A stretch of 64,000 bases of DNA from Euprymna scolopes (lineage: Eukaryota). Location: assembly GCA_053919585.1 (NCBI GenBank), contig CM132800.1; one strand, 5' to 3'. Below the pieces are notes generated by a model. That model was given only the letters and a program-made list of their open reading frames with translations. It did not search any database and was not told the DNA's origin. Position 1 is the stretch's first letter. Every line of letters starts with the position of its first letter. The translations under genes were made by a program, and so were the position numbers. Shown in pieces: positions 1 through 64,000 of this stretch.

Positions 1-1772
1 GACAAGTCCTTTCTAGCAGCTCCTGCCCAGATGTGGCAACAGTATTCCATCCTTGGACGTGCCTGGCTCTTATATAGATAAAGAATTGTATCAGCAGTGA
101 GATATCTACCGGATCGATAGAAAGATCCCACCATTTTTCCAGCGGCCTTGGCAACAGATTTGATGTACGTGTTCCATTTAAGATCAGGAGTAATGGTCAA
201 GCCCAGAAGCTTGTCAAAACTTGAGGCCTCCTGAAGACGAGAGCCATTCATTTCAATTGATGCCAGATAGGGATCAGAATGTTGATGATGTAAAAAGAGA
301 AGCTTGGTTTTAGATGCATTAAAAGTAACCAGCCACTCCTTTCCCCATTGTACTATGTGCTCAAGATCAGAGGAGAGAGAATCAGAGAGAACTTAGTCAT
401 TTACTGTCTTAGATGTGCTACCATAAATGGTAGTGTCGTCAGCATAAATGTCTACAAATGATGTAAGGATGTGATTTGGTAGATCATTAATGTAGATCAG
501 GAAAAGAGTTGGGCCCAGAATGGACCCCTGAGGGACACCAGCATTAATACTGTGAGCTTCTGATTTTTGCCCCTCAACTACTACTCTTATGAACCTATCA
601 GAAAGAAATGATTTAATAATTGAGAAGACATTTCCAGCTATACCATAGCTAGAGATCTTGTGAAGTAAACCTTTATGCCATACCCTATCAAAGGCCTTAG
701 ATATGTCAAGAGCAATTGCCCTAGAAAGGTTGCCTCCATCGAGAGATTTTCTAATCCTATGAGATATAACTCTAAGCACATCTGCTGTAGATCTAGGAGA
801 ACGGAAACCATATTGAGTGTCACTAAGAAGGTTATTTTTGTTGAGATGGTTGATTACTTCTGTATTTAACACAGATTCCAGCAACTTACTCATGACGCAC
901 AGGAGACTTATTGGCCTCTACTGAGAGGAGGATGAGCGATCACCTGAATTCTTAAATACAGGGCATACTGATAAAATTTTCCAGGATGATGGGAAGCTAT
1001 TCTCCTTAAGACAACGTTTAAATAGTTTTGTAAGAATGGGCGTTAGTTCAGGTTGAAGTTTTTTTAGTACTATAATTGGAATACCGTCAGGGCCAGTTGC
1101 TTTACTGGAATCAAGGTTTTTGATTAGCTTGGCAACATCACGTACAGATATTTGTATATCACATAGTGTGTTTTCTGATACAGGCGGAAATATTGGGGGT
1201 TGACGGCCTTGGTCGCAAAGGGTAGAATTAGCTGCAAAGTTCTTGGAAAAGAGTTTGGCCTTGTCTGATGCTGACGAGATTACCTCAGGTCCATTGATGA
1301 TAGTTGGGATAGAGCACATGCTTCTGTTCAGGATTCTGTTTGCTATTTGCCAAAACTGGTGGGAACCAAGCCATTGCTCAGCTACTTTGGACTTGACGGA
1401 TTGAGCATACAACTCTCTTGCGTTCTTTATTACTTTCTTGCAATGGTTGCTGGCAGTCCTGAAAGCAGCTTTAGTTTCCATACATCTATTACGTTAGAAG
1501 CAGTGGAAAAAGTGATTTCTGTGCGCAATGGCAGCAGCACATTCTGGAGAGAACCATGGCTGGCTGTTAGGTTTTTGCTGAAACTTTTTCGAGGGTATGA
1601 AACGATCAATACCTACAATTAACCATTCCATCAGGTCTGATACTATAGAGGATACATCCTTTTTAAACATGGAACGCAGAGATAGATCCGATATAAATGT
1701 ACGGAAGCTATCCCAGTCAGCCTTAGTGTATCGATATACTGTACGATGGAGAGGTACGTCTGGGGACTTAAT
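1..1772 (-). mobile_element. CR1/L2-group LINE, 5'-truncated and stop-disrupted ORF2 (RT); runs off the left edge
   Basis: ORFs 1494-1814, 918-1481 and 393-893 are consecutive pieces of one ORF2: [44 protein letters not shown]. Confidence 0.92.
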
Positions 1773-16201: not shown

Positions 16202-17190
16202 CGAGGGGCGTGCAATAAGTAATGCTCCTGACCCACTTCCCATAACAGTAGAGCAACGAAACTTGGCACAGTTATTAGTCTTTCTCTACATAGGAACCAC
16301 CCAGAGTTATGCATTTCTCTCATTGTTTCATGCAGCTCTGGAGACCGTTTTTGTAGAACACCCCAGGTTGGTCCTCCAACCACAATGTGACTTCAGAAAT
16401 CAAGGCTGCATCATCTGGGAAACGCTTTCCTTTCAAAAACCACTTCATGGCTAGGAAGAGGTGAAAGTCAGAGGGTGCAAGGTCAGGAGAGTAGGAAGGA
16501 TGGGGAGGATTTCATAACCACACACCCATGCTTCTGATCTGGCGACATGCAAGTTGTGGATCGGAGCGTTGTCCTGCAGGAGGGGGGTAACTTTGCTGAT
16601 CTTATCCCGCCTCTTGATTTTGATAGCTTCCCTTAATTTCCTGAAAAGTGAAGCATAATAGGCTCCTGTAATTGTGGTACCCTTTGCCAGGAAATCTCTC
16701 ATCACTACTCCGTCTTGGTCCCAGAAGACTGTGAGCATGATCTTGCCAGCGGAGGGCTGCACCCTTGCCTTCTTTGGAGATGGTGAGTCCAAGTGCTTCC
16801 ACTGCATTGACTGAGCTTTGGTCTCTGGATCATAGTGATGGACCCAGGTTTCATCCTGTGTAATCAGTCTTTTGAAAAACTTTGACTCGTCTTCTTGGCA
16901 CATCTCCAAATTCATCCTCAAGCACTCGACGCGTTCTCGCTTCTGGAATGGTGTGAGCAACCTGGGAATCCATCTGGCAGACACCTTATGCATATGCAAA
17001 TGGTCATGAATGATAGTTTCCACATATGCAAATGGTCATGAATGATAGTTTCCACAGACCCTGTACTAATCTTGACATCTTGGGCTATTTGGCGAATAGT
17101 AATGCGCCGATCTTCCAAAATGGCAGCCTCAACTTGACGGACAGATGCTTCATCAATGGCAGAAGGGGAGCGACAATGTCTGGGAGCTGT
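16202..17190 (-). mobile_element. Mariner (DD34D) transposon, 5' part lost; transposase pseudogene
   Basis: TIR CGAGGGGCGTGCAATAAGTAATGC after TA; KVSARWIPRLL, TQDETWVHHY, QDNAPIH; a 32-bp tandem duplication at 16991-17054 causes a frameshift. Confidence 0.92.
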
Positions 17191-19258
17191 TTTCACAATG
17201 TTTTGGTTAATGTAATCTCTAATCTTCTACATGTGTACCTTGTCAAACTTCAGAATTTTTCTGTCCAACATAGGAATCTGTACAGAATTTGAAACAGAAC
17301 CCTTTATGTAATCGACGAGGGTCACATGCTCTTGTTCCCTTAGCTATGATCGGGTAGCAGTTCTAAGTTTTTTTTGTTTTTTTTTACATGGAGGTCACCA
17401 CTTATCAAGGCCTGGAGGCCGCTCAGGGATAAGGGTTATTGTGTGTACAGTAATCAATGAGATAGTGTTGTAGTAATCATTATAGTATTGGAGATTTGAT
17501 AGAGTGTCTTACTTAAGAGGGCGGTTTGTCAGGAATTTGTTTATGTTGGATTTGAAGACATCCAAGTTGTAGTCAGGTGGGAAACAGGCAAATGGAAGAG
17601 AGTTCCACAGTCATGCACTTCTGAGAAAGAAGCTCTGCTCATGGAATCTACATTTGGATTTAGGCACAGATGAAGAGTGGGGAAAATTATTGACAGTAGT
17701 TTCAGCCAGACGGGTGTTTCTCATGAAAGATTGGCGAGGGGGGATGAGAGATTGCAGCTCAGACGAGCACTTGCCATGGAAATAACGATAAAACAAAGAC
17801 AGGCTCACAACGTCTCTTCTGTGGGAGAGAGGCTGCAGGGAAGAGAAAAGGGCATCCCTCACTAAGCTACAAAGTCTATTTTGTACTCTGTCAAGGCAAG
17901 ATAGGCTGTTTTTAGCAGCTCCTGCCCAGATGTGGCAGCAGTACTCCATCCTTGGACGTACTTGGCTTTTATACAGATTAAGAATTGCATCAGTAGTGAG
18001 ATATATTCTGGAGCGGTTGAAGGATCCCACCATTTTCCCAGCGTTCTTGGCAACAGGCTTGATGTAAGTGTTCCATTTCAGATCAGGAGTAAAGCTCAAA
18101 CTCAAAGGCTTGTCAAAACATGGAGCCTCCCCAAGACGACAGCCATCCATTTCAATTGATGCCAGATGGGGATCAGAGTGTTGATGATGTAAAGATAGAA
18201 GCTTGGTTTTGGATGCATTAAAAGTAACCAGCCACCACTGTACCACACGTTCAAGATCAGAAGAGAGAGAATTAGAGAGAACCTTGTCATTTACGGCCTT
18301 TGATGTGTTGCCATAGATGGTCGTGTCATCAGCATAGAGGTCAACGAATGATTTAAGTATGTGTTTTAGGAGATCATTGATGTAGATCAGGGAGAGAGTT
18401 GGGCCCAGGATGGACCCCTGAGGGACTCCAGCATTAATACTGTGGGCCTCTGATTTCTGCCCATCAACCACTACTCTTATGAACCTATTGGAGAGAAATG
18501 ATTTAATGATTGAGAAAACATTTCCAGTGATACCATAGCTGGAAATCTTGTGAAGTAGGCCCTTATGCCATACCTTATCAAAGGCCTTTGATATGTCAAG
18601 AGCAATTGCCCTGGAAAGGAAGCCTTTGTCAAAAGATTCACTAAATCTATGAGATATAACCGTTAGCACATCTGCTGTAGATCTTTCAGAGTGGAAACCA
18701 TATTGCATGTCACTAAGAAGGTTGTTTCTGCTGAGGTGGTTAACTACTTCTCTATTTAATATGGATTCCAACAACTTACTCATGACACACAGGAGACTTA
18801 TTGGTCTGTACTGAGAGGGAGATGACTTTTCATCTGAATTCTTAAATACAGGGCATACTGATGAGGTTTACCAGGGTGTTGGAAAGCACTTCTTCTTAAG
18901 GCAACACTTAAACAGTTTTGTAAGTATGGGGGCAAGTTCTGGTTGGAGCTTTTTCAGTACTATAACTGGAATGCCGTCAGGGCCAGTTCCTTTACTGGAA
19001 TCAAGGTTCTTGATTAGCTTGGCGACCTCACACACAGATTTTGAGTATTTCCCCGCACTGAGGATTGAACTTTCGACCTCCAGAAGAATGCAACTTACAA
19101 CTGAATGCTACCAAGAACTTTAACCGTTACACCAAGGACTTTTCGAAATTCCATGCGGATTCCCAATTCTGCCAGAAAGATACCTGAGTTCGACAAGATA
19201 TAGCTGAAGAAAGTCGGAAGTTATGTTGAATTAAATTATCAATCCTCACCTCAAAAAA
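17190..19258 (-). mobile_element. tRNA/hammerhead SINE (copy 4), split by the LINE at 17368-19039
   Basis: Tail at 17190-17367; head at 19040-19140 with A box TGGTGTAACGG (19124-19134, -) and B-box-like 19062-19070; inverted arm 19141-19258 contains CTGAAGA. Confidence 0.72.
17368..19039 (-). mobile_element. CR1-group LINE, 5'-truncated, with RT region, 3'UTR and poly-A
   Basis: 390-aa ORF 17611-18783 with [33 protein letters not shown]; T tract at 17368-17385. Confidence 0.95.
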
Positions 19259-19260
19259 AA

Positions 19261-19390
19261 ATCATAGTCTAGTATCTGTTCTGATGCTAGACTTACCCTT
19301 TTCTGTCCTCGGTCAGTGGAGGAGAAATCCTTCATGACTGAGACAATTTTTATTTTTGTTCCTATCCAGAGAAGCTAGATTTTCTCCACA
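19261..19390 (+). ncRNA. U2-snRNA-like variant or U2-derived repeat, 5'-truncated copy
   Basis: ATCATAGTCTAGTATCTGTTCT resembles U2 nt 26-46; the body matches 59535-59655 and 61566-61685; ATTTTTG Sm-type site. Confidence 0.65.
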
Positions 19391-19690
19391 TCAAAAAATC
19401 GATCTTGTGTTTAACTTTGCCCCGTGGGGAGTTAAGTAAATAGGAACATGTAATATATTCAACTGCATTGAGTTAACTAATGCAGTCTTAGATGTCTTTT
19501 TTTTAATATATCATATCTAAATTGTACTTCATATATAAATAGTTATTACTTCAGCTGATATATATTTGTGGATTATTTGGATTATATCAATAAGTTGGGG
19601 TTTTGTCAATTTGACATGCTCCCAGCCAATCTATCATTGAACTATATATATAATGAGTTGTGAAACAGCGAAACAGTACTGTATGTGGAT

Positions 19691-20627: not shown

Positions 20628-21654
20628 CTACTTCATTTACTCACATAAATTTAATATACGAAAATATAGATTTATGCGTAAACTTTAAGTATTTACTTCA
20701 AAAGTGCTCAATATGTAGGTAGAGCAAGTTAGTAATTTATAAAATATATATGGCGATTAAGCTACACTGAATATTCTGCGTTTCATCCACTATAGGATTC
20801 GTCAGACTTATGCGCGAATTCTGTGGTTGCTTCTTGTTTTTATATATGTTGAGGATTTCTAGTTAGCCAATCAGCTTTCTAGTATCCACCGCGTCCCTTC
20901 CTATCAGCCAATGGGCATGCATTTTATCGAACAAAGGATCTGTTTTATGACTAGGTTAGTGGTTTAAGGTAGATCTTTTCCTTCCTTTTTTTTTTTTTAT
21001 ATATATAAATATACCTATGTGTACACACATACATGCACATATATATACATACATATATATATATATATACATATATGTGTGATCGTTTGAGTATATTCAT
21101 GTTTATTTAATTTATTTATTTGTTTGTTTTCCATTGTTATTGTTAGTTTTAAAGCTATTTTGTATCGCTATCCTAGAGTAAGTTTTATTTTGTAAACACA
21201 GTTGTTTGCTATTTCTCGTCTACAGTTTAATAGATTTTGAGGTTCTTTAAAGTACAGGATAGCAAATTTTTCATGGAGGCATAATTTACATGGGTCGTCT
21301 AAATGTTTGCACGTGGTAGCTTGTCTCATTATTTTCCATTCGACTACCGGCAAATGTCCGCTTTCTTTGAGTTCCCAGTATTTATTCGCTAGTGTTGTTT
21401 TTATACGGTGTTTTTTATTTTTTTAATGTACTTTTATGGTCATAGTATTGGGCTTTGAAATCTAAGGAAGTCATGCCTATGTAATATTTCTTGTTATTCG
21501 GGTTTTCTTTCGCAAATATTGTTGCTTGATAAACTACACTTTTTGTTAGACATTTATTTTGGACTGGGCAAAGTGTGCGGTGTCTACAATTGCATTTTTC
21601 TTGTTCGTTATTAGTATTTTTATTTATGGTATGGTTGTTCTTGTCCGGGGTTGG

Positions 21655-21708
<54 letters not shown>

Positions 21709-22708
21709 TCTGCTAGTGTTAGTTTTATTTCTGTCATGGTGTCTACTTTTTTTATTGTTTATTTTGTTGTTGTTTACATTGTTTTCATTTAGTATTTTGT
21801 TATTATGTGCTTTAATTATCATCTCTAAATTTTCGCAACAACTGTAAGATAACTTCAAGGTATTTTTATGGAAGATTTTGTCTAAGGGGTTGGTTGCGGG
21901 AAAGTGTTTTTCAATAAGATCTAGAAATTTCTTGCCAAGTTTTGTTTTTAACATTTGATTGTATGGGGCCGTATACCAAATTATAGTTCTTTTTCTTCTA
22001 TTTTTAATTTTATTATAGTTGTTGGTGTTTTGTTGCTTATATTTGATATCGATATTTTTGTATCCACTATTTTTTAGGGCTGTTTCGTAGATATTGGTTG
22101 ACCTGTTAAATGCATTTTCATCGCTTGAGTTATTACTGAGTCTACTTACGATCGAGTTAGGAATGTGTTTTATAATTGATGGTGGGTGGTTGGACTTAGG
22201 GTTTACGTAAATTGGAGTAGCGTTATCTTTTAAGTATGCTTCATATGTGTTTTTATCTAAGTTTAATGTGACGTCCAGGAAGTTAGTTATTTTTATGTTA
22301 GCTGATACGTCCGCTTTTAGGCCTAATTTTTTCATTTCTTTGTGTATGATTTTCTTAAAGTTTTCTCCCTTGACTTTGTTGGAGTTTTTTTTTATAGCTA
22401 GTCCGTCATCTCTATATAGGCCGATATCTGTAGTATCGAATATGCTTGTAAGGGTATATAGAATGAATAATCCCACAAGATCTGATGCCTCGGCAGAGTG
22501 TCATCGCCAAATCGAACGAATTTTTCATTTTAGTTTTTATCCATTGGTTACTGTTATTTATTAGAACTGATTTTCTACATTTTTTAATGATGTTGATTTC
22601 TTCTGAGGATATATCAGTGTATGCCTCGGCAAATTCTAGGGCAATGTTAAAAAGTTCTTCGGATATTTCAGTGTAGCTTAATCGCCATATATATTTTATA
22701 AATTACTA
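20625..22708 (-). mobile_element. Penelope-like element (Naiad-type), 5'-truncated; RT plus GIY-YIG endonuclease
   Basis: YRDDGL, NFLDVTLNL, SNHPPSII, CNCRHRTLCPVQNKC (CxCx5Cx5C), VVYQ..YYIGMT, CKLCLHEK; 42-bp inverted pLTR piece 22667-22708 versus 20730-20771; TA-repeat flanks. Confidence 0.92.
20758..20810 (-). ncRNA. Type I hammerhead ribozyme in the PLE pLTR
   Basis: UAAGU CUGACGA AUCC-UAUAGU-GGAU GAAACGC-AGAAUAUUCA-GUGUA^GCUUA: full catalytic core, stems I-III pair, GUA cleavage triplet. Confidence 0.88.
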
Positions 22709-22879
22709 TATATACAGTGATGATCATATTTATTGGCACGGTAAAATAAAAGTTAAATTTTGTCTAATAAATTCTAAAAAAGGGATTAAATTAAAGAAAA
22801 TAACAAAGTATATTATGTATTTTTAACTGGCCTTTCCGATGCAGCAATCAGATTTTAGAAAAAATAAATAACAAAGGAA

Positions 22880-25389
22880 CAACAACACCATACATTCAGC
22901 TCTTTGCCGTCCACACACTGCGCAGATTTTAAGGTTTCGAACATCATACGATGTAGTACGGCGTCCCTTGCTTCATCATCCCAGCCCTTCGTTACCGAAC
23001 TTACTCTCCTTCTGAGTATTCCGCAAGCCACACGAAGCCAACCGCACACCGGAAAGTGCCCGACAAGTTGACCACACAGGGAAAAGATTGTTCGTCGCGT
23101 AACAATACTGGGAGCCTCCGGAATTGCATTTCCTCGCTTCCACCGCAGTTCATTGCGTTCCATCCTGACTGCCAATCCCAGCACCCGTGCACCGTCCTTC
23201 AACTGCTCCGGGTTCTTGCACTCCAACCCGAACTGCGCGAGGTGTTCTCTCACACGGGTCGCGGGCACCACGTCTTCATTGACAAAAATGTCATCAATGT
23301 AAGCAGATGCTGCGCGGCTTATAACTTCTTCCTGAGATAGTACTTCGCTGACAATTGCTCTCATTATCAAGGGAGCCACATTCAAACCAAACCCCAGACG
23401 GGTCAGACAGTATTTTTTCCCATCGATTTCCACAGTCTGGTATGGCCACAGTGTCTCATGGACCCGGACTTGTAGGTATGCTCTTCTGAGGTCCAGTAGA
23501 GACACGTTAGCACCTTTTTGTCTCCACTCACGCAGCTTAGCCGCACAAACATCTGCGTTGGCTGTAAATGCGTCTACGTAATGATTTCGCTCCCGGTAGT
23601 CCATCACCGGGCGCACTTTGGCTTTGTTCTGCTGTATCACAGCCATCAAGGGAATTAGACCTTTGGGGGGTCCCAATTTATCCTCTGGGTATGGCACGAG
23701 CCAACCATTATCTATCCAGGTGTGGAGCTCCTGCATGTATTCTTCACGAATTTCTGCTGGCACTGGGTACTCTGACACTCGATTATGCAGCCTTTCAGGG
23801 GGGTGGTCCACAGACCATTTCCACGATGCGGTCCACCTTCGGTTTTGATGGTCAAAGGTAGCAGTGAAATCTGGTTCATCGATAGAAATGGCTGCGCATT
23901 TAATACTTTTCCTGGCGCCCAGCCGCACTGATCCTGTAGGCTTGACAACGACACCTCCTAGAGCTTTTATGGCATCGATCCCTAGAAGCAAGTCAAATCC
24001 CAGTGGCTTGCCATGCACACATCGACTCTGGCAGACACACCTTCATCAGTGGATACAGAGACCGTTCCAACACCGCAGCACGCATGGGACATTCCACCAA
24101 TGGTGTTGACATTCACGTTTGTTTTTCTCCAAGACCGGCACCGGTCTGCATGTAAAATTGTCCTGGAGCATTCTGTATCAATAAGAGCCAAACATCGCGT
24201 CCCGTCAACATGGATGCTTATCACCGGGAGCGTCGTGTTCACATCTTGGTTGGGAAGGAGACTGGCGCTTATGCGTCCTCCCTTTGCTCGTTTCCCGAGT
24301 AGTTCCGAGCCCAGTGTCCACTCTCACCGCAACGGTAACACCGTGTTCCACGTTTTCGACAGTCCCTTGCAAGGTGGCCTTTAACATTGCATTTGAAACA
24401 GGTCACGTTAACAGGATTATTCTGAGCCCTGTTGTTGGGTGAGCGTGTGGCCGCAACCACATCCTGATTTTGTTCGCCAGTCGTCGTCAAAATTCTCGCT
24501 CTCGACATTAGCTCCCCCATGGTCAGGGCTTTGATGTTCGGCACCTGTTGAAGAGCAATTGAGATGGTGTCAGGGAATCCAGTGACAAAAATTAATTTTG
24601 TGAGTCTCTCTAAGCTTTCTCCTGTGAATCTGGCCAATCCAACCAACTGCCTGATTTTGTTGGCGTACATATCCACACATTCACCAGCCCATCTAACCAT
24701 AGTTATTTTTCTATATGCTGCAAACGCATCATCAGTAAATGCCTCCTTTAATCGAGCCTCAATCTGGTCTATTTTCTTTTGATCGTCCTCCTCCATTTCC
24801 ATGTAGAGGGCGAGCGCATCGCCTTCCAGGTATAAAGGTAGCAGACTCGCTACGTCATCCACCTGCTGAAGTTGTGCGACAAGTCTCACTTTTTTCAGCC
24901 ACGCTACAACGTCTCCCTCGCCAGAGAACGGCTTGATAATATCACTGCTTATCCGCACCTTCGCCACATTCGGGCTGAAATAGCTTGAAACAAAAATGTA
25001 GTAGGCAAAAAAAAAAAAATGTTCTGTCAGCAACAGTACAACTTCAAAATAGTCAATATCGCCCACCTCCAGAAGAGAGGGAATTCCTGTCCGTGATAAC
25101 CGTGGTAAAAGAAGACACACTCCAATCGCCAGAAACACCCACACACACAGTTTGCAGGACACTGCCGACTCGTCTCTAGCCTCCTGCTTTTATAGTGGCC
25201 GGGAATTATCCATTTGCATAATCAAATGAGAAAGAAACGTGATTTTCCGAGAGTTGCATGGGGTAAATGCTAATAAAAACCCCCGGACGCCATCTTGGAA
25301 TTCTCTTTTCCTCCCAACCGGTGACACAACAGACGTACCCGAGGTAAGCTCTTTTTCCCCTCATTTTAGTTATTGCTACTTCTGCTACA
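22880..25389 (-). mobile_element. Gypsy-like LTR retrotransposon: probable 5' LTR (24997-25389), gag, protease, RT; truncated at the start of RNase H
   Basis: gag with CFKCNVKGHLARDC knuckle, LIDTEC protease, RPVMDYR/LGFGL/YIDD RT; LTR ends TGTAGTAG / CTGCTACA with TATA near 25190 (-). The LTR limits are tentative. Confidence 0.85.
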
Positions 25390-26753: not shown

Positions 26754-27469
26754 CACGATGAAATCGCACATTCCAAAAATAAATAAATAATAATAATAAA
26801 AGGACAGACGTATTATTGCTGAAATTAAGAGAACCCATTTTTTTTTTTTTTTGCTCAAATAATTTACGTGACTAAAATAAGAATTGGCGAACAATTATAC
26901 AAACACCAACCTACCTCAGTTGATTGAAACGAGGAAAGAACAGATACTGAATTTTTAATTATTCATTCAAAAATAAAATTAAAATTCTTTTTGCCATGAT
27001 AGATACTGCACTTGAAATTATTTATTAACACATAAAACATATTTTATTTACAAATATTTTTTTAATGATTTCTTGAAAATTTCAAACTCAAAGAAATGGA
27101 GTTTCTTTATTTTTCACATATATCGTTATAGTTTGGTTCATCAAATTAGAATTTATTTTTTTAACTGAAAATAATTTAAAAATAGAAAAAGAAATTTTGG
27201 TTATAATCCTTTCATCACATCTCATTTTATCCAAAATCAGTTTGGAAATACCACAAAACATGTTTCATGTATGGATTTTTATGCGTACCATTTTATGATC
27301 AAATATAATTCTTTCAATCATTTTCACAGAAGTCAAACTCTCTTCCATCAGTTTGCAGTTGATAGGTTTGCAAAAGTTGAAGCAAAAAAACTTTTATATA
27401 TGAAAACTCATTAAAACAAGCTAAGGATAGATACCTACATACATCTCAAAGGTCATATAAATAACTATA

Positions 27470-58367: not shown

Positions 58368-58649
58368 TGTTGGCAGTAATCAACCTAGTGATGGCCGTTG
58401 GAACAGGCCAGAGAGACAGAGCAGCTTGCCACCTCAACAGAGACCGTTTCCCAGTCGGTGGGACAACTTAGATGATGATAGAACAGCACCCCCACAGAGT
58501 GGTGGTGGTGGTGGTGGTAGTGGTGGTTCAACATGGGGCTCTAACAATCGCTGGGATAATAATCGCCAAGACTCGCGGTGGCGAAATGAAGATTATAATA
58601 AAAGAGAGGATTGGTCGGTACCTCTGCAAAGAAATGAAAGAATGGAGGT
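58368..58649 (+). CDS. DDX3: DDX3 exon ending DWSVPLQRNERME; the gene continues beyond the window
   Basis: 282 nt, phase 2-2, ttcag acceptor, GT|GTAAGT donor; matches DDX3 DWSKPLPPSERLE. Confidence 0.92.
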
Positions 58650-59284
58650 GTAAGTGTCTTTTTTTTTTCTTCCCCCCCCCCATCTTCACTTTCGGCTTAT
58701 GGAGTTAGCTCCCTATAAATCTATCAAGATGAAAAGTGTTGGGATTCTTCCAGGCAGTAGAAAATGTCCATGGACAAATCAGTCTTGTAGAAGGAAGGAT
58801 ACTGTTTTGGAAGGAATAGCTCATTATGCCACATTAACTCTAATAAAAGTTCATTTCAAATTATAAGAATCACATTACATCAATTAATAGCTCAACGAAT
58901 AAGGGTTGAAATTAATTTTGATTTGCATTTTTTTTTTTTGTCTGCACATTAAACTTGTACAAAAATAAAATTTTATTTGGAAGTGTTAGGACTGTATAAC
59001 CACGGCCACTTGAAATATAGAAGGCCTGTTAACTGAAAAATGCCTACAAGTGATGTAGGTAAGATTTGTCAAACAATCACTGTCGATACTATATGAGGCC
59101 ATTTTTAAAGATTTAAAACGTGTTAAAGAAAATAAAAGGAACCCAATTCGATTAATAATGAAACTGAACTTTATTCAATATAAAATATAAATATTATCTA
59201 TGTGAAATTACGTAATTTTAAAGCAATATAAAATCTAATAAAACTGAATTATCAATTTAGGGAACAAACATATTAAACACAAGC

Positions 59285-59655
59285 ATTTCTTGGCCCGAAG
59301 GCCAAGATCAAAGTGTAGTATCTGTTCCGGCAGATACTGCAATCAAAGACCATATGTGGGGTTGCTCCCACATATAAGACCTTGGTCAATGTAGGGGCAA
59401 CCCTTCATACCAATTGTCACTAGCCAGCTCTCCTTTCCCACCCATCAGGAGCTGGTCCCCTTTTCCCTCCCCCCTCCCTCTCTACATTTAAAAAATGGCC
59501 TTGTGCCTAATTTGCTCAGTGGGGAAGCAAATAGTCTGTTCTGATGCTACACTTGACCTTTTCTGTCCTCAGTCAGTGAAGAAATCTTTCATAACTGAGA
59601 TTATTTTTGTTCCTATCCAGAGTGCCCTTTATTGGGAAGCTGGATTTTGCCCACA
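59285..59655 (+). ncRNA. U2-snRNA-like variant or U2-derived element, interrupted by a 207-bp insertion
   Basis: TTCTTGGCCCGAAGGCCAAGATCAAAGTGTAGTATCTGTTC matches the U2 5' end; TCTGTTC at 59321-59327 and 59535-59541; ATTTTTG Sm-type site and 3' hairpin. Confidence 0.75.
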
Positions 59656-61537
59656 AGATTATGCTGGAATATTTAAGTAGCTATTACTTTAAATACAAAA
59701 ATTATATTAAAAATTTTGGTTTTCTGTTCTATATCCATTTCTCTCTCCCCCGCCCCCTGTTTTTTATCAATGTGTAGCGTATTTTCATCAGTTACATGGT
59801 TAGGAATCCTGTACTCCGCTATAGTCTTCATTTTCATATCCATGCAGAATACTTGAATAGGAAAATGAAGTTAACATAACTACTAAAAGACAATCATAAT
59901 GTGAACATTGGTTAAAAACTAAGAAAATATATTAAACATCTACGTTATTAGATCAGGGTGATAATGAATTTGGGAAGGGACATTATTTCACTCAATGAGA
60001 GTTGTCTCACAGGCCATCATCAGTGAATGAATGCTCACTGGCAGTAACCTGTGGTGTTCCCTGGAAACCAAGTGACAAGTCTCCCCAGATTTCCAGTGTT
60101 CTCCACCTCTTCACTTGTGCAGATGATTGAATGTTATAGCAACAGCCGGTGTCATTGATTTCTTGTTGGCATCAGCCATTGGTGTTTCCTGGGGTTTTGG
60201 GCGACAAAATGCCTCCCCAAGGTACCAGATTTAAACTGCACACTTCCAGTGGAGATCTGGTTAGTACTCTCCCACCTTGGTCTTTCCATCCTCTCTAACC
60301 CTTCATGACTAGTTGGTGTGGCACCATTCGATGTCATCTATACCAGTTTTTCTTTGTTTGTTTTTTTTATAAGGGTGCTTGTGTAGTGTATGCACATGTA
60401 TTTTAAATAGTATTTCCAAGTTAAATTCAGTTTTTATGCTATCTTTTTTAGGTTTGTTTTACTATACACTCAAAAAAGTTGTCAAAAAACAAATATTTAA
60501 CAAATGTGATCAAAGGCAAGATAAATGACTTTTCTACGTAACCGAATAAGTTTTTAGTGTTTTTATTTGATGTAAAATGTTTATCGATATATTTGAAAAG
60601 GACAAATGGCGGCGAGCTCGCTGTTGAATCCTTTAATTTTGGGGAAATGAGTTCAAACTTAAACTATACAAAATGGTAGGCTGACATATATTGAGTATTT
60701 TTCTATGTCATGGTAATCTACATTGAGTGAGTTTCTAACAGTATTTTGTGTAGTTTTTTAGTTGGAACTTATTTTCCCAAACTTAACATATTCAACAACT
60801 AGCTTGCTGCCATTTGTCTTTAAATATATCGATAAACACTGATTTTCGAACCTAATAAACCGTTTATATTAAATAAAAATGCTAAAAACATTCAGTTAGA
60901 TAGAAAAGTAATTTATCTTGCCTTTGATAACATTTTTTCTTTTTTTTTTTTTTTTTTCCATTAAATTGTTAAGTGAAAGTGCAGAATAGTTACAAAAAGT
61001 TAGTATATTATGTTGGATTCAAATTATCCCCATTTTCAGTTATAATAATTATCCAAATGGAGAATTTTTCTTTCTAAGAAAATACATGGACGTTTACCAC
61101 AGCCATATTTTTTATGCCTATTAGCATGACCACTTGGTTGAACACAGGAAACTTTAGGTACCCTTTACCTGCACGTCAATTTGGTAATGACGTCACACTG
61201 TCATGTTCACTGGCCTCCTCCCTCAGTAGCCATGATATAACCACGGCCACCGAGAGTAAGAAGGCCTGTTAACTGAAAAATGTCTGCAGGCAATGTAGGT
61301 AAGATTTGTCAGACTGTCAGTACTATATGAGGGCCATTTGAAAAAGAGCAATAAAACATTTTTTAAAAGAAAAAGGAACACAGTTCGATTAATACTTAAA
61401 CTGAACTTTATTCAATATAAAATATAAATATTATCTATGTAAAATTGAGTAATTTTAAAGCAATATACAATTTAATACTGATAAAACTGAATTATGAATT
61501 TAGGGAACAAACAATTAAAGAAACATTAAACAAATAT

Positions 61538-61685
61538 TTTTTGGCCTTCGGAACAAGATCAGTGTATCTGTTTTGATGCTACACTTTACCTTTTCTGTCT
61601 TTGGTCGGTGGAGAAATCTTTCATGACTGAGATTATTTTTGTTCCTATCCAGAGTGCCCCTTATTGGGAAGCTGGATTTTCTCCA
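61538..61685 (+). ncRNA. Uninterrupted, more decayed copy of the U2-like element
   Basis: TTGGCCTTCGGAACAAGATCAGTGTATCTGTTTTGATGCTACACTT..; ATTTTTG at 61635-61641. Confidence 0.68.
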
Positions 61686-62715
61686 AGATTATATCTTGAA
61701 ATATTTAAATACAGAAACTAAAAGTTTTGGTTTTCTCTTCTGTCCATTTTTTCCCCACGTTTTTCATCAAAATGTGTAGCGTATTAGTTGTCTCACAAAC
61801 CATCAGTGATTGCTCACTGGCAGTAACCTGTGGTGTTCCCTGGAGACCAAGTGACAACAAGTCTCCTCAGATTTCCAGTGTTCTCCACCTTTTGACCACT
61901 TGTGCAGATGATTGAATGTTATCGCAACAACCGTTGTCACTGATTTCTCGTTGGCATCGGCCATTTGGGTCACAAAATGCCTCCCCAAGGTACCAGATTT
62001 GAACTGCACACTTCCAGTGGAGATTTGGTCAGTACTCTCTCACCTCGGTCTTTCCATCCTCCCTGACCCTTCACAACTAGTTGGTGTGGTGTGGCGCCAG
62101 TCGATGTCATCTACAGCAGTTTTTTTTTTATTATTATTACTATTATGATAATAATAAGGGTGCTTGTGCAGTGTATGCACATATTTTAAATATTTTCAAG
62201 TTAAATTAAATTTTAGGTTTGTATTGCTGTATACATAGATTCGAAAAAGTTGTCAAAACAAATCACAAATGTTATCAAAGGCAAGATAAGTTATTCTTCT
62301 ACCTATCTGGGAAGGTTTTTAGTGGTTTTACTCACTTTAAAACGTGTAATCGCTTCGAAAATCATACAATGTTTATCGATATATTTTTTAAAAAAATGTC
62401 GGCATGTTTGTAACTTATTTTGCCTTTGATAACATTTATTTGTTATATATATATTTTTTTTTTTGACAACTTTTTCGAATCTGTGTACAGTAAAACAAAC
62501 TCGTTATGTAAATTATTTACAGTTAAAATGTTATAAAAAACAAAAGTTTTAAATGTTTCAAAGAAATGAATTACGCCCCGTGGTAAAATATTGATAATTC
62601 ACCAATCGTTAAAAAAAAAAAAAAAAAAAAAAAAAAACTGAAAAATGCTTACTTTAAAATATTTGTAAATACTCAGTGAAAAGTTAAAAGAACGGACTGA
62701 AAAATATACAAATTG

Positions 62716-63292
62716 GGGTTTATAGATTCGAAAAAGTTGTCAAAAAACAAATATATAACAAATAAATGTTATCAAAGGCAAGATAAGTTACTTTTCTACC
62801 TAACTGGATATGTTTTCAGGGTTTTTATTTAATGTAACATGTTTATTCAGCTCGAAAAACATACTGTGTTTACCGATGTATTGGAAAATTATAAATGGCG
62901 CCCAACTCTCTTTAACACGGTAAGTTTGGAAAAAGGTGCTATAAATATAAAATTAGACAAAATACTGTTAGAAACTTGCTCAATATATATTACAGTGACA
63001 TAGGTTGACATATTCTGTGTTTTTTTTTTTAATAGTATTTTGTCTAGTTTATTATTTATAACACCTTTTCCCAAACTTACCGCGTTAAAGAGTCGGGCGC
63101 CATTTTGAATTTTCCAATACATCGGTAAACAATGTATGTTTTTCGAGCTGAATAAACGTGTTACATTGAATAAAAACAAAAAATATATCCAGTTTGGTAG
63201 GAAAGTAACTTATCTTGCCTTTGATAACATTTATTTGTTATATATTTGTTTTTTGACAACTTTTTCGAATCTGTGTACAGTAATACAAACCC
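62716..63292. mobile_element. Foldback MITE M2, best preserved copy (arms of about 230 bp)
   Basis: GGGTTT..AAACCC ends; near-perfect inverted arms. Confidence 0.85.
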
Positions 63293-64000
63293 AAAAATTG
63301 CTTGTTTTGCAGTGAAAAAAAAAATAAATAAATAAAATGAAATATTCGACTTTCTCCAATAAAAAGTTCAAACACGAATTCACTTACGATATTTTGATTA
63401 AAATTATCCCAAATGTGCAATTATAATTATTTTCCGAATGGAGAATTGTTCTGTCTTTAGAACATACATGGACCATCGGTAACACATATTGGTAGCCATA
63501 TTTTTTTATGCCTGTTAGCATGACCACATGGTTGAATACCGGAAGCTGTCTATACCTACAACTTAATTAGGAAATGACGTTACGCTGTCATATGCATCGG
63601 CCTTTCTCGGTAGCCACGGTATAACGCTATCAAAGGGAACTAACTCCTTTTCTGTAAAAGGCAGTTACACCACACACACCCACTTTAACTTGGGCATGGT
63701 AATTCTCGTGCGGCATTTTTTTTATAGCGCCCACAGACTGGATAAAATTGGACCACATGAAAACCTATAGAACTAAAGTTGGATTATAAACAATAGGTTT
63801 GGAAGAATCACTTTTCAGTTTTAGAATTGAAAAGGACATTCATAACAGTACCATAGACAACTATTATATTCAATCTAAAATTTCAATTTTTAGAGCCAGA
63901 CTCATAGTATGAAGTTTAAAAATTGCTATTCAGTTTGATTTGTTAGCTTAAATGTTACATAAGTTTTTGAAATTATAATTTTGTATGTTCGATAATTCTT

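What the first reader, a model, noticed from the sequence alone, without database searches (positions are those of the whole stretch)
59285..61685. Dispersed U2-like RNA family with a self-masked branch-point recognition sequence and a retained Sm site
Seen: three copies (19261, 59285, 61538) of an approximately 150-nt unit. It starts with the U2 5' end: stem I perfected to TCTTGGCC-CGAA-GGCCAAGA, then GTGTAGTA. Stem IIa is replaced by GATGCTACACT, which pairs back over the branch-point recognition sequence in an 11-bp hairpin. The 19261 copy shows a compensatory double change (AGTCTAGTATC/GATGCTAGACT versus AGTGTAGTATC/GATGCTACACT). Next come a hairpin (CTCRGTCA..TGACTGAG), ATTTTTG at about nt 98-105, and a 3' hairpin (ATCCAG..CTGGAT). 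Known: the U2 Sm site sits at about that position, and U1/U2-derived SINEs (SINEU) are described from crocodilians. Inference: this is either a divergent Sm-class U2 paralog (decoy or regulated snRNA) or an invertebrate U2-headed SINE that neutralises its own splicing activity. Two copies lie in sense orientation in a DDX3 intron.
Basis: partly seen in the sequence, partly recalled or inferred. Interest (0 to 1): 0.88.

Follow-up and report, generated by a model that had tools for sequence, protein, structure and literature searches.

The report
Decayed U2-headed short retroposon copies
The three repeats are old, dead copies of a short non-coding jumping element whose first ~47 bases were copied from U2 spliceosomal RNA; they are not a working U2 variant, but they show an unexplained hairpin that folds the element's start back over the U2 piece.

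Summary
The three copies are real, but they come from only two insertion events. Copies B (59284-59654) and C (61539-61685) lie in an old ~2.3-kb tandem duplication. Copy A (19266-19389) is 5'-truncated and has a target-site duplication.

U2 homology covers only U2 nt 1-47. Rfam U2 scores 42.4 bits, below the gathering score of 46, on the B head only. The head ends within one base of where a nested 207-bp element (59328-59534) has inserted with a 7-bp TCTGTTC duplication. That is the published Keno/Utopia U2 target site.

The "self-masking" hairpin is real. It exists because the body begins with an inverted copy of about 14 nt of the U2 head. The unrelated nested element begins with the same kind of fold-back (12 bp).

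The single compensatory pair is not significant. ATTTTTG is common in this AT-rich DNA and lacks the purine flanks of an Sm site. The B/C body diverged no more slowly than its flanks.

Best reading: a SINEU-like, U2-headed, tailless non-autonomous retroposon whose head is a carried-along target flank. A decoy or regulated snRNA is not supported.

Earlier notes of this scan report the same kind of element, very abundant, elsewhere in this genome.

The parts
19266..19389 (+). Copy A: 5'-truncated unit. It starts at the first paired base of the fold-back (U2 nt ~30) and ends ...GATTTTCTCCAC. It has a 7-nt internal duplication and a ~16-nt deletion in the 3' hairpin.
19247..19265 (+). Upstream copy of the target-site duplication of copy A (CACCTCAAAAAAAAATCAT). 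Its partner is 19387-19403 (CACATCAAAAAATCGAT).
   Evidence: only 1.3% of genomic 25-mers align this well
59284..59327 (+). Copy B head: U2 nt ~3-47, holding stem I (59288-59307), GTGTAGTA (59313-59320) and TCTGTTC (59321-59327).
   Evidence: (Rfam U2 42.4 bits, E 1.8e-6, gathering score 46)
59328..59534 (+). Nested 207-bp unrelated non-coding element inserted in the U2 head. It is flanked by the 7-bp duplication TCTGTTC (59321-59327 and 59535-59541). Its first bases, GCAGATACTGCA (59330-59341), fold back on TGTAGTATCTGT of the head (12 bp).
   Evidence: the empty site is seen in copies A and C
59535..59654 (+). Copy B body: 3' arm of the fold-back (59543-59556), hairpin 3 (59568-59599), ATTTTTG (59603-59609), hairpin 4 (59615-59645), 3' end GATTTTGCCCAC.
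61539..61685 (+). Copy C: uninterrupted paralogue of B with a decayed head (GTAGTA reduced to GTA, stem I 3' arm GAAC, loop TTCG) and a well-kept body.
58995..63625 (+). Two units (58995-61241 and 61236-63625) of an old ~2.3-kb tandem duplication that carries copies B and C.
58369..58650 (+). DDX3/PL10-type N-terminal exon (...EDWSVPLQRNERMEV) followed by gtaagt. Copies B and C lie in the intron that follows it, in sense orientation.
   Evidence: the gene name rests on recalled motifs and was not confirmed by a search (one search was uninformative)

Best explanation
The unit is a ~160-nt non-autonomous, non-coding retroposon. It has a U2-derived head (U2 nt 1-47), a ~115-nt unrelated structured body and no poly(A) tail. 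That makes it a mollusc-type relative of the crocodilian SINEU elements. The window holds two ancient insertions: A, and the ancestor of B and C, which was later copied by a local 2.3-kb tandem duplication. All three copies are now decaying neutrally.

Shown:
- The composition of the unit.
- 5' truncation plus a flanking duplication in A.
- The same 3' end in two independent insertions.
- A head that stops within 1 nt of the end of the TCTGTTC duplication made by the nested 207-bp element, which has landed at the known Keno/Utopia U2 site inside the B head.

Inferred:
- The head is the upstream half of a U2 target. It was carried along when an element sitting in a U2 gene or U2-like head was transcribed from the U2 start.
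- The element is copied by a U2-site-specific LINE through target-primed reverse transcription.
- The head lets the cDNA anneal to U2-like targets, as R2 RNAs that keep upstream 28S sequence do. It also makes every copy a new landing site.

The fold-back over GUAGUA arises because the body starts with an inverted copy of about 14 nt of the U2 head. It belongs to the biology of the 5' junction of U2-site elements. It is either a scar of snap-back priming or a functional RNA or DNA hairpin. It is not a device for masking splicing activity.
For: - Three copies with exact shared 21- and 22-mers.
- Rfam: nothing at gathering score. U2 scores 42.4 bits on the B head only, and its alignment beyond nt 47 runs into the nested insertion. 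A scores 16.5 bits and C has no hit.
- The flanking duplication of copy A has p~0.013, and A is truncated at U2 nt ~30.
- A and B share the 3' end ...GGATTTTSYCCAC, with no similarity beyond it.
- B and C sit in a tandem duplication. Substitution identity is 0.893 in the body against 0.854 and 0.880 in the flanks, so the body is not constrained. The head identity is 0.656 plus deletions.
- The nested 207-bp element has the 7-bp duplication TCTGTTC. A and C show the empty site.
- The published Keno/Utopia 3' junction begins TCTGTTCT (PMC4640811).
- Both fold-backs are significant: duplex energy -19.1 and -18.2 kcal/mol, at most 2 of 10,000 shuffles reach them, and 0 of 1622 genomic 24-mers do.
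- The body and the nested element are otherwise unrelated.
- Internal T4-T5 runs argue against Pol III transcription, as for SINEU.
- The R2 precedent for retained upstream target sequence is in PMC3774820.
- Earlier notes of this scan on other parts of the genome report very abundant U2-headed retroposons and a Keno-like LINE partner. I did not check them.
Against: - Only three old copies from two events could be examined.
- No LINE in the window shares the tail.
- The flanking duplication of B is only 6 bp (CACAAG) and weak on its own.
- There is no poly(A) tail, unlike all described SINEU.
- The reconstructed unit is strongly structured (z about -6.4). Stem variation in hairpin 3 is mostly G-U compatible on the sense strand (6 of 7 pairs). 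Some RNA-level constraint on the source gene is therefore possible.
- The single-stranded AUUUUUG between two hairpins does have an Sm-site-like layout.
Confidence: 0.85

Rival explanations
1. A functional divergent U2 paralogue (an Sm-class decoy or regulated snRNA), held here as a small tandem gene array. Its branch-point recognition sequence is kept inactive by the fold-back until it is unwound.
For: - The U2 5' end includes GUAGUA.
- The fold is strong and has four hairpins.
- AUUUUUG is single-stranded between two hairpins.
- There is one both-sided change in the fold-back.
- Two copies sit in a 2.3-kb tandem repeat, as snRNA genes often do.
Against: - C has lost GUAGUA and part of stem I. 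B is split by 207 bp. A lacks nt 1-29 and sits between flanking duplications.
- The body is no more conserved than the flanks.
- There is no U2 homology beyond nt 47, and the score is below the Rfam threshold.
- The Sm-like heptamer lacks purine flanks and is common in this 34% GC window: 57 hits.
- The same fold-back is found in an unrelated inserted element.
Confidence: 0.04
2. These are not a propagating family. They are sporadic chimeric retrocopies, each made independently when a LINE reverse transcriptase switched template from some RNA onto U2 snRNA, like the human U6/U2-L1 chimeras.
For: - Template switching onto snRNAs is documented and was invoked for SINEU heads (PMC4494074).
- Only two independent events are visible here.
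Against: - A and B/C share the same head-body junction, the same fold-back and the same 3' end, although they differ by ~17%. Independent switches would give different junctions.
- The junction coincides with the U2-site duplication boundary rather than a random U2 position.
- Earlier notes claim very many copies (not checked here).
Confidence: 0.05
3. A DNA-level repeat only: part of a larger DNA transposon or a segmental duplication, with no RNA intermediate.
For: - B and C were indeed multiplied by DNA-level tandem duplication.
- MITE-like palindromes lie nearby.
Against: - Copy A shares only the ~125-nt unit with the 2.3-kb repeat and nothing beyond it.
- A is 5'-truncated with a ~14-19-nt flanking duplication. 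The unit has no terminal inverted repeats.
Confidence: 0.03

Closest known systems
SINEU (U1/U2 snRNA-headed SINEs of crocodilians; Kojima 2015, PMC4494074)
   Same: - Short non-coding retroposon with a 5' head copied from U2 snRNA.
- Internal oligo-T runs that argue against Pol III transcription.
- No recognisable internal promoter.
- A suspected link to Tx1/Keno-type LINEs, some of which carry the same snRNA head.
   Different: - SINEU was reported only from crocodilians, and all its families end in poly(A). This unit has no A-tail.
- Here the head ends exactly at the Keno/Utopia cleavage site.
- Here the body starts with an inverted copy of the head.
- The partner LINE and the copy number were not testable here.
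Keno (Tx1 clade) and Utopia (NeSL-like) U2 snRNA gene-targeting LINEs (PMC4640811)
   Same: - The nested 207-bp element sits at their site, with 3' flank TCTGTTCT.
- The family's U2 head ends at that site.
- Tandem or stacked insertion in U2 sequence is described for Utopia-1_NVit.
   Different: - The elements here are ~160 and 207 bp long and non-coding.
- The target is a U2-derived head inside another retroposon, not a U2 gene.
- No Keno or Utopia ORF is in the window. The RT fragments present are unrelated to the unit.
R2 elements whose RNA keeps upstream 28S sequence (Eickbush et al. 2013, PMC3774820)
   Same: - A site-specific non-LTR element whose template RNA carries the upstream target flank at its 5' end. 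This is proposed to anneal the cDNA to the target and give uniform 5' junctions.
- The R2 5' region also contains a segment complementary to that upstream flank (P1').
   Different: - In R2 the complementary segment is part of an HDV-like ribozyme, and its two strands lie at least 23 nt apart.
- Here the arms are 4-6 nt apart, which cannot form an HDV-like fold. No ribozyme family matched.
Canonical U2 snRNA (Rfam RF00004) and snRNA retropseudogenes
   Same: Nt 1-47: stem I, GAUCAAAGUGUAGUAUCUGUUCU. The three-A form is, from my recall, also the Drosophila form.
   Different: - No stem IIa/IIb and no stem-loops III/IV.
- No homologous Sm region.
- Retropseudogenes contain only snRNA sequence; here ~115 nt are foreign.

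Membership tests
U2 spliceosomal RNA (RF00004) | Reaches the Rfam gathering score (46 bits) with the full-length model | tested here: not met
   No hit at gathering score. Copy B scores 42.4 bits, but only nt 1-47 align credibly and the rest runs into the 207-bp insertion. A scores 16.5 bits. C has no hit.
U2 spliceosomal RNA (RF00004) | 5' end with stem I and the branch-point recognition sequence GUAGUA | tested here: met
   Present in copy B at 59288-59320. GUAGUA is also present in A. It is lost in C.
U2 spliceosomal RNA (RF00004) | Stem IIa/IIb and 3' stem-loops III and IV homologous to U2 | tested here: not met
   The body has no U2 similarity by covariance model. Stem IIa is replaced by the fold-back.
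U2 spliceosomal RNA (RF00004) | Sm site RAU(3-6)GR, single-stranded between stem-loops | tested here: inconclusive
   UUAUUUUUGUU is unpaired between hairpins 3 and 4. Both flanking bases are U, not purine. ATTTTTG occurs 57 times in the window.
U2 spliceosomal RNA (RF00004) | snRNA-type upstream PSE and downstream 3' box | not testable with these tools
   No reference PSE for this taxon was available. A is 5'-truncated, and B and C share their upstream sequence only because of the duplication.
SINEU / snRNA-headed SINE | Short (<500 bp) non-coding retroposon with flanking duplications and frequent 5' truncation | tested here: met
   The unit is ~160 nt. A is truncated and has a ~14-19-nt duplication (p~0.013). 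B has a 6-bp CACAAG duplication, which is weak. Two independent insertions share the 3' end.
SINEU / snRNA-headed SINE | 5' head derived from U1 or U2 snRNA | tested here: met
   (U2 model positions 1-47).
SINEU / snRNA-headed SINE | 3' poly(A) tail (all described SINEU; PMC4494074) | tested here: not met
   The copies end ...GGATTTTCTCCAC / ...GCCCAC, directly followed by the flank.
SINEU / snRNA-headed SINE | Many dispersed copies with subfamily structure, mobilised by a Tx1-type LINE | not testable with these tools
   No access to the rest of the genome. The metagenome and viral scans were blank or gave chance hits. Only unverified earlier notes speak to this.
Keno/Utopia-type U2-site insertion (applies to the nested 207-bp element) | 3' junction immediately followed by U2 TCTGTTCT... 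| tested here: met
   ...GCAAATAG|TCTGTTCTGATG at 59534/59535. The published junction is in PMC4640811.
HDV-like or other self-cleaving ribozyme at the 5' junction (R2-type) | Match to a ribozyme family, or a nested double-pseudoknot layout | tested here: not met
   No ribozyme family at E<=10. The fold-back arms are only 4-6 nt apart.

The most novel reading that the evidence does not exclude
The fold-back is a functional module shared by elements that ride behind this U2 head. Each such element starts with an inverted copy of the U2 sequence just upstream of the cleavage site. Its RNA (or cDNA) therefore forms a hairpin, and its DNA a palindrome, centred on the TCTGTTC cleavage interval. This could act as an RNA mimic of the double-stranded U2 target that the site-specific LINE protein binds. 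Or it could make the head of each copy a better landing site than the U2 genes themselves. Either would explain self-targeting and stacking.
Probability: 0.25. Interest if true: 0.7.

Novelty: new variant of a known kind. Interest (0 to 1): 0.45.

Why it matters
In the papers I could search, snRNA-headed SINEs are described only from crocodilians. How they get their heads and how they are transcribed was left open (PMC4494074).

This window shows three things in one place:
- The U2 head stops within one base of the end of the duplication that a U2-site insertion makes.
- A second, unrelated element has landed in that head.
- Both elements start with a fold-back onto the head.

This supports a simple origin for snRNA heads: they are the co-transcribed upstream half of the target of a site-specific LINE. 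It also points to a junction hairpin that can be tested.

For annotation, these copies should be masked as repeats and not called U2 variants or snRNA genes.

Tried and rejected
1. Search for more copies for covariation. A metagenome scan with a conserved 18-mer gave 19 loci that share only the 18-20-mer, which is chance. A viral-contig scan with the fold-back 20-mer gave nothing. Covariation therefore rests on three sequences and is underpowered.
2. Rfam in permissive mode on all three copies. Only the U2 head matched. There was no ribozyme, and no match to any other snRNA family.
3. Constraint test on the B/C pair. The body is not more conserved than its flanks (0.893 against 0.854 and 0.880 substitution identity). 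The higher BLAST identity of the body came from indels in the flanks.
4. Shared tail between the unit and the nested 207-bp element. The only shared piece is GGGAAGC, which is not significant.
5. Partner LINE in the window. The RT fragments at 17611-18783 and 393-893 are LINE-type. The 21.4-25.2-kb element has a retrovirus-like RT. None shares sequence with the unit.
6. HDV-like ribozyme idea for the fold-back. Rejected on geometry and for lack of any hit.
7. Snap-back origin of the 5' arm of copy A at integration. This is unlikely, because A keeps the same T.G wobble as B and C rather than a perfect complement.
8. Confirming DDX3 through solved structures failed, because the exon lies in the disordered N-terminus. 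The whole-database protein search was not used, because its length filter would exclude full-length DDX3 for a single-exon query.

Full report
**Observation.** The unit occurs three times on the + strand.
- A 21-mer spanning the fold-back and a 22-mer spanning ATTTTTG each hit exactly three places, where none is expected. BLAST at word size 7 finds no further copies in the window.
- Copy A is 19266-19389. Copy B is 59284-59654. Copy C is 61539-61685.
They are never all together in one intact copy.
- B has the full U2 head but is split by 207 bp (59328-59534). C is contiguous but its head has decayed. A starts only at U2 nt ~30.

**B and C are not independent.**
- They sit at equivalent positions in two units (58995-61241 and 61236-63625) of an old ~2.3-kb tandem duplication.
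- In a global alignment of the units, substitution identity is 0.893 in the unit body. It is 0.854 in the upstream flank and 0.880 in the downstream flank. The head is the worst-kept part, at 0.656 plus deletions that reduce GTAGTA to GTA.
- Nothing therefore suggests selection on these two copies since the duplication.
- The only part of the 2.3-kb unit that recurs at 19.3 kb is the ~125-nt element itself. The element is thus a discrete mobile unit that was duplicated passively here.

**Retroposon hallmarks.**
- Copy A is 5'-truncated. It is flanked by CACCTCAAAAAAAAATCAT and CACATCAAAAAATCGAT. Only 1.3% of genomic 25-mers align that well to the upstream flank.
- B is flanked by CACAAG on both sides. 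This is weak on its own.
- A and B end at the same place (...GGATTTTCTCCAC and ...GCCCAC) and share nothing beyond it. Target-primed reverse transcription truncates 5' ends, not 3' ends. A shared 3' end in independent insertions therefore rules out the unit being the 5' part of a longer element.
- There is no A-tail.
- T4-T5 runs inside the unit argue against Pol III transcription, as Kojima noted for SINEU.

**Extent of U2 homology.**
- Rfam finds nothing at gathering score.
- In permissive mode, U2 scores 42.4 bits (E 1.8e-6, gathering score 46) on B. Only model positions 1-47 align convincingly. The rest of that alignment runs into the nested insertion and is spurious.
- A scores 16.5 bits and C scores nothing.
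- The body therefore has no detectable U2 ancestry. The 'retained Sm site' is not in a homologous context.
- ATTTTTG occurs 57 times in this 34% GC window. In all three copies it is flanked by U on both sides rather than by purines. Its unpaired position between two hairpins is Sm-like in layout only.

**Where the head ends.**
- U2 homology runs through ...GTAGTATCTGTTCT and then stops.
- In B, the 207-bp element is inserted with a 7-bp duplication, TCTGTTC (59321-59327 and 59535-59541). A and C show the empty site.
- Its 3' junction...AAATAG|TCTGTTCT, is the junction published for the U2-targeting LINEs Keno and Utopia (PMC4640811).
- The family's U2 head therefore ends within one base of the end of the duplication that a U2-site insertion makes.
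- This is what is expected if the head is the upstream half of a U2 target, transcribed together with an element sitting at that site. A random template switch onto U2 snRNA would not predict it.
- The B locus itself now has the arrangement 'U2 head + new element'. That shows how a new headed family could arise.
- R2 gives a precedent. R2 RNAs that keep upstream 28S sequence are proposed to use it to anneal the cDNA to the target, which gives uniform 5' junctions (PMC3774820).

**The fold-back.**
- With the insertion removed, B folds into four hairpins at -55.1 kcal/mol (z about -6.4).
- Hairpin 2 is UCAA-A-GUGUAGUAUC / GAUGCUACAC-UUGA: 14 bp around the loop UGUUCU.
- The 3' arm is an inverted copy of the ~14 nt of U2 sequence just upstream of the cleavage site (13 of 14 bases plus one indel).
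- The nested element has no other similarity to the family body. It nevertheless begins GCAGATACTGCA, which pairs with UGUAGUAUCUGU of the head: 12 bp, two of them G-U, with loop UCCG.
- Both duplexes are beyond all 1622 genomic 24-mer controls and beyond at least 99.98% of shuffles.
- Two unrelated elements behind the same U2 site share the feature. That ties it to retroposition at this site and not to masking of splicing activity.
- I cannot decide here between two origins.
  - It may be a scar. The cleaved top strand could snap back on itself before switching to the cDNA.
  - It may be a selected hairpin or palindrome.
- A, B and C share the same fold-back, so in this family it is inherited with the template.

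**Covariation.**
- One pair differs on both sides: G-C in B, C-G in A.
- At ~17% divergence, about 0.1 such events are expected by chance in 11 pairs. This is suggestive only.
- Hairpin 3 has seven variable pairs, and six stay paired through transitions (G-U compatible). About half would do so by chance (p~0.06).
- Quasi-palindrome template-switch mutation can produce 'compensatory' changes in DNA without any RNA function. The window holds a probable example. The stem I loop of B (CGAA) is the reverse complement of the C loop (TTCG), and the B stem is perfect while the C stem is not.
- The 'perfected stem I' may therefore be private to B.

**Comparison with the literature.**
- SINEU are short retroposons with U1 or U2 heads. 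They are known only from crocodilians, all have poly(A), and they are linked to Tx1-Mar LINEs that cluster with Keno. Some of those LINEs carry the same heads (PMC4494074).
- The present unit matches in head, size, non-coding nature and oligo-T runs.
- It differs in three ways: it lacks poly(A), its head is bounded by the target site, and it has the fold-back.
- I found no description of a mollusc U2-headed SINE in the held library. That library is incomplete.

**Earlier notes of this scan.**
- Notes and follow-ups on other parts of the same genome describe tens of thousands of U2-headed retroposons, a Keno-like partner LINE with the same 47-nt leader, self-targeting arrays, and fold-backs 'in each variant'.
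- The scan has therefore met this kind of element before on other DNA.
- I could test only what the window offers: the head length, the nested insertion and the second fold-back. These agree with the notes.
- Copy number, the partner LINE and the taxon ('mollusc') remain unchecked by me.

**Verdict.**
- The sequence observation is real but over-read.
- The SINE alternative is right, and the snRNA-paralogue alternative is not supported.
- The three copies are dead relics.
- What remains interesting is the origin of the head from the target flank and the recurrent fold-back at the junction.

Noticed in passing
window 58995-63625: Old ~2.3-kb tandem duplication inside the intron. Each unit begins with a CRE-like TGACGTCA/TGACGTTA motif followed by a short 'ATG...GTAG|gtaag' piece (about 61186-61310 and 59020-59062; a partial third copy at 63566-63625). 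It could be a duplicated promoter and first exon, or part of an unclassified repeat.
   Followed up: partly
window 60445-60956, 62208-62500, 62724-63297: Palindromic, MITE-like foldback elements (inverted halves 70-86% identical) inside the duplicated units. Unit 2 carries extra copies.
   Followed up: no
window 59296-59299 vs 61547-61550: The stem I loop of copy B (CGAA) is the exact reverse complement of the copy C loop (TTCG). The B stem is perfect and the C stem is not. This looks like a single quasi-palindrome template-switch mutation.
   Followed up: partly
window 26937-27020 (- strand): Two U2-site-like 12-13-mers (CAAGTGCAGTATCTATC and TCAGTATCTGTTCT) lie about 60 nt apart in AT-rich DNA. 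They may be a relic of another small insertion at a U2-like site, or chance.
   Followed up: no
window 21415-25162 (- strand): A retroelement with zinc-knuckle ORF, a retrovirus-like RT (best solved-structure hits are retroviral RTs) plus DUF7047, and a 353-aa ORF without a Pfam match. It is probably an LTR- or DIRS-type element.
   Followed up: partly
window 17611-18783 (-), 393-893 (-), 16451-17023 (-): Two LINE-type RT fragments and a mariner-type transposase fragment. None shares sequence with the U2-headed unit.
   Followed up: partly
window 19100-19258: Copy A is inserted directly after the A-rich end (…CCTCACCTCAAAAAAAAA) of another repeat, which another first-stage note calls a tRNA-headed SINE. 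The A-run is part of the flanking duplication of copy A.
   Followed up: no
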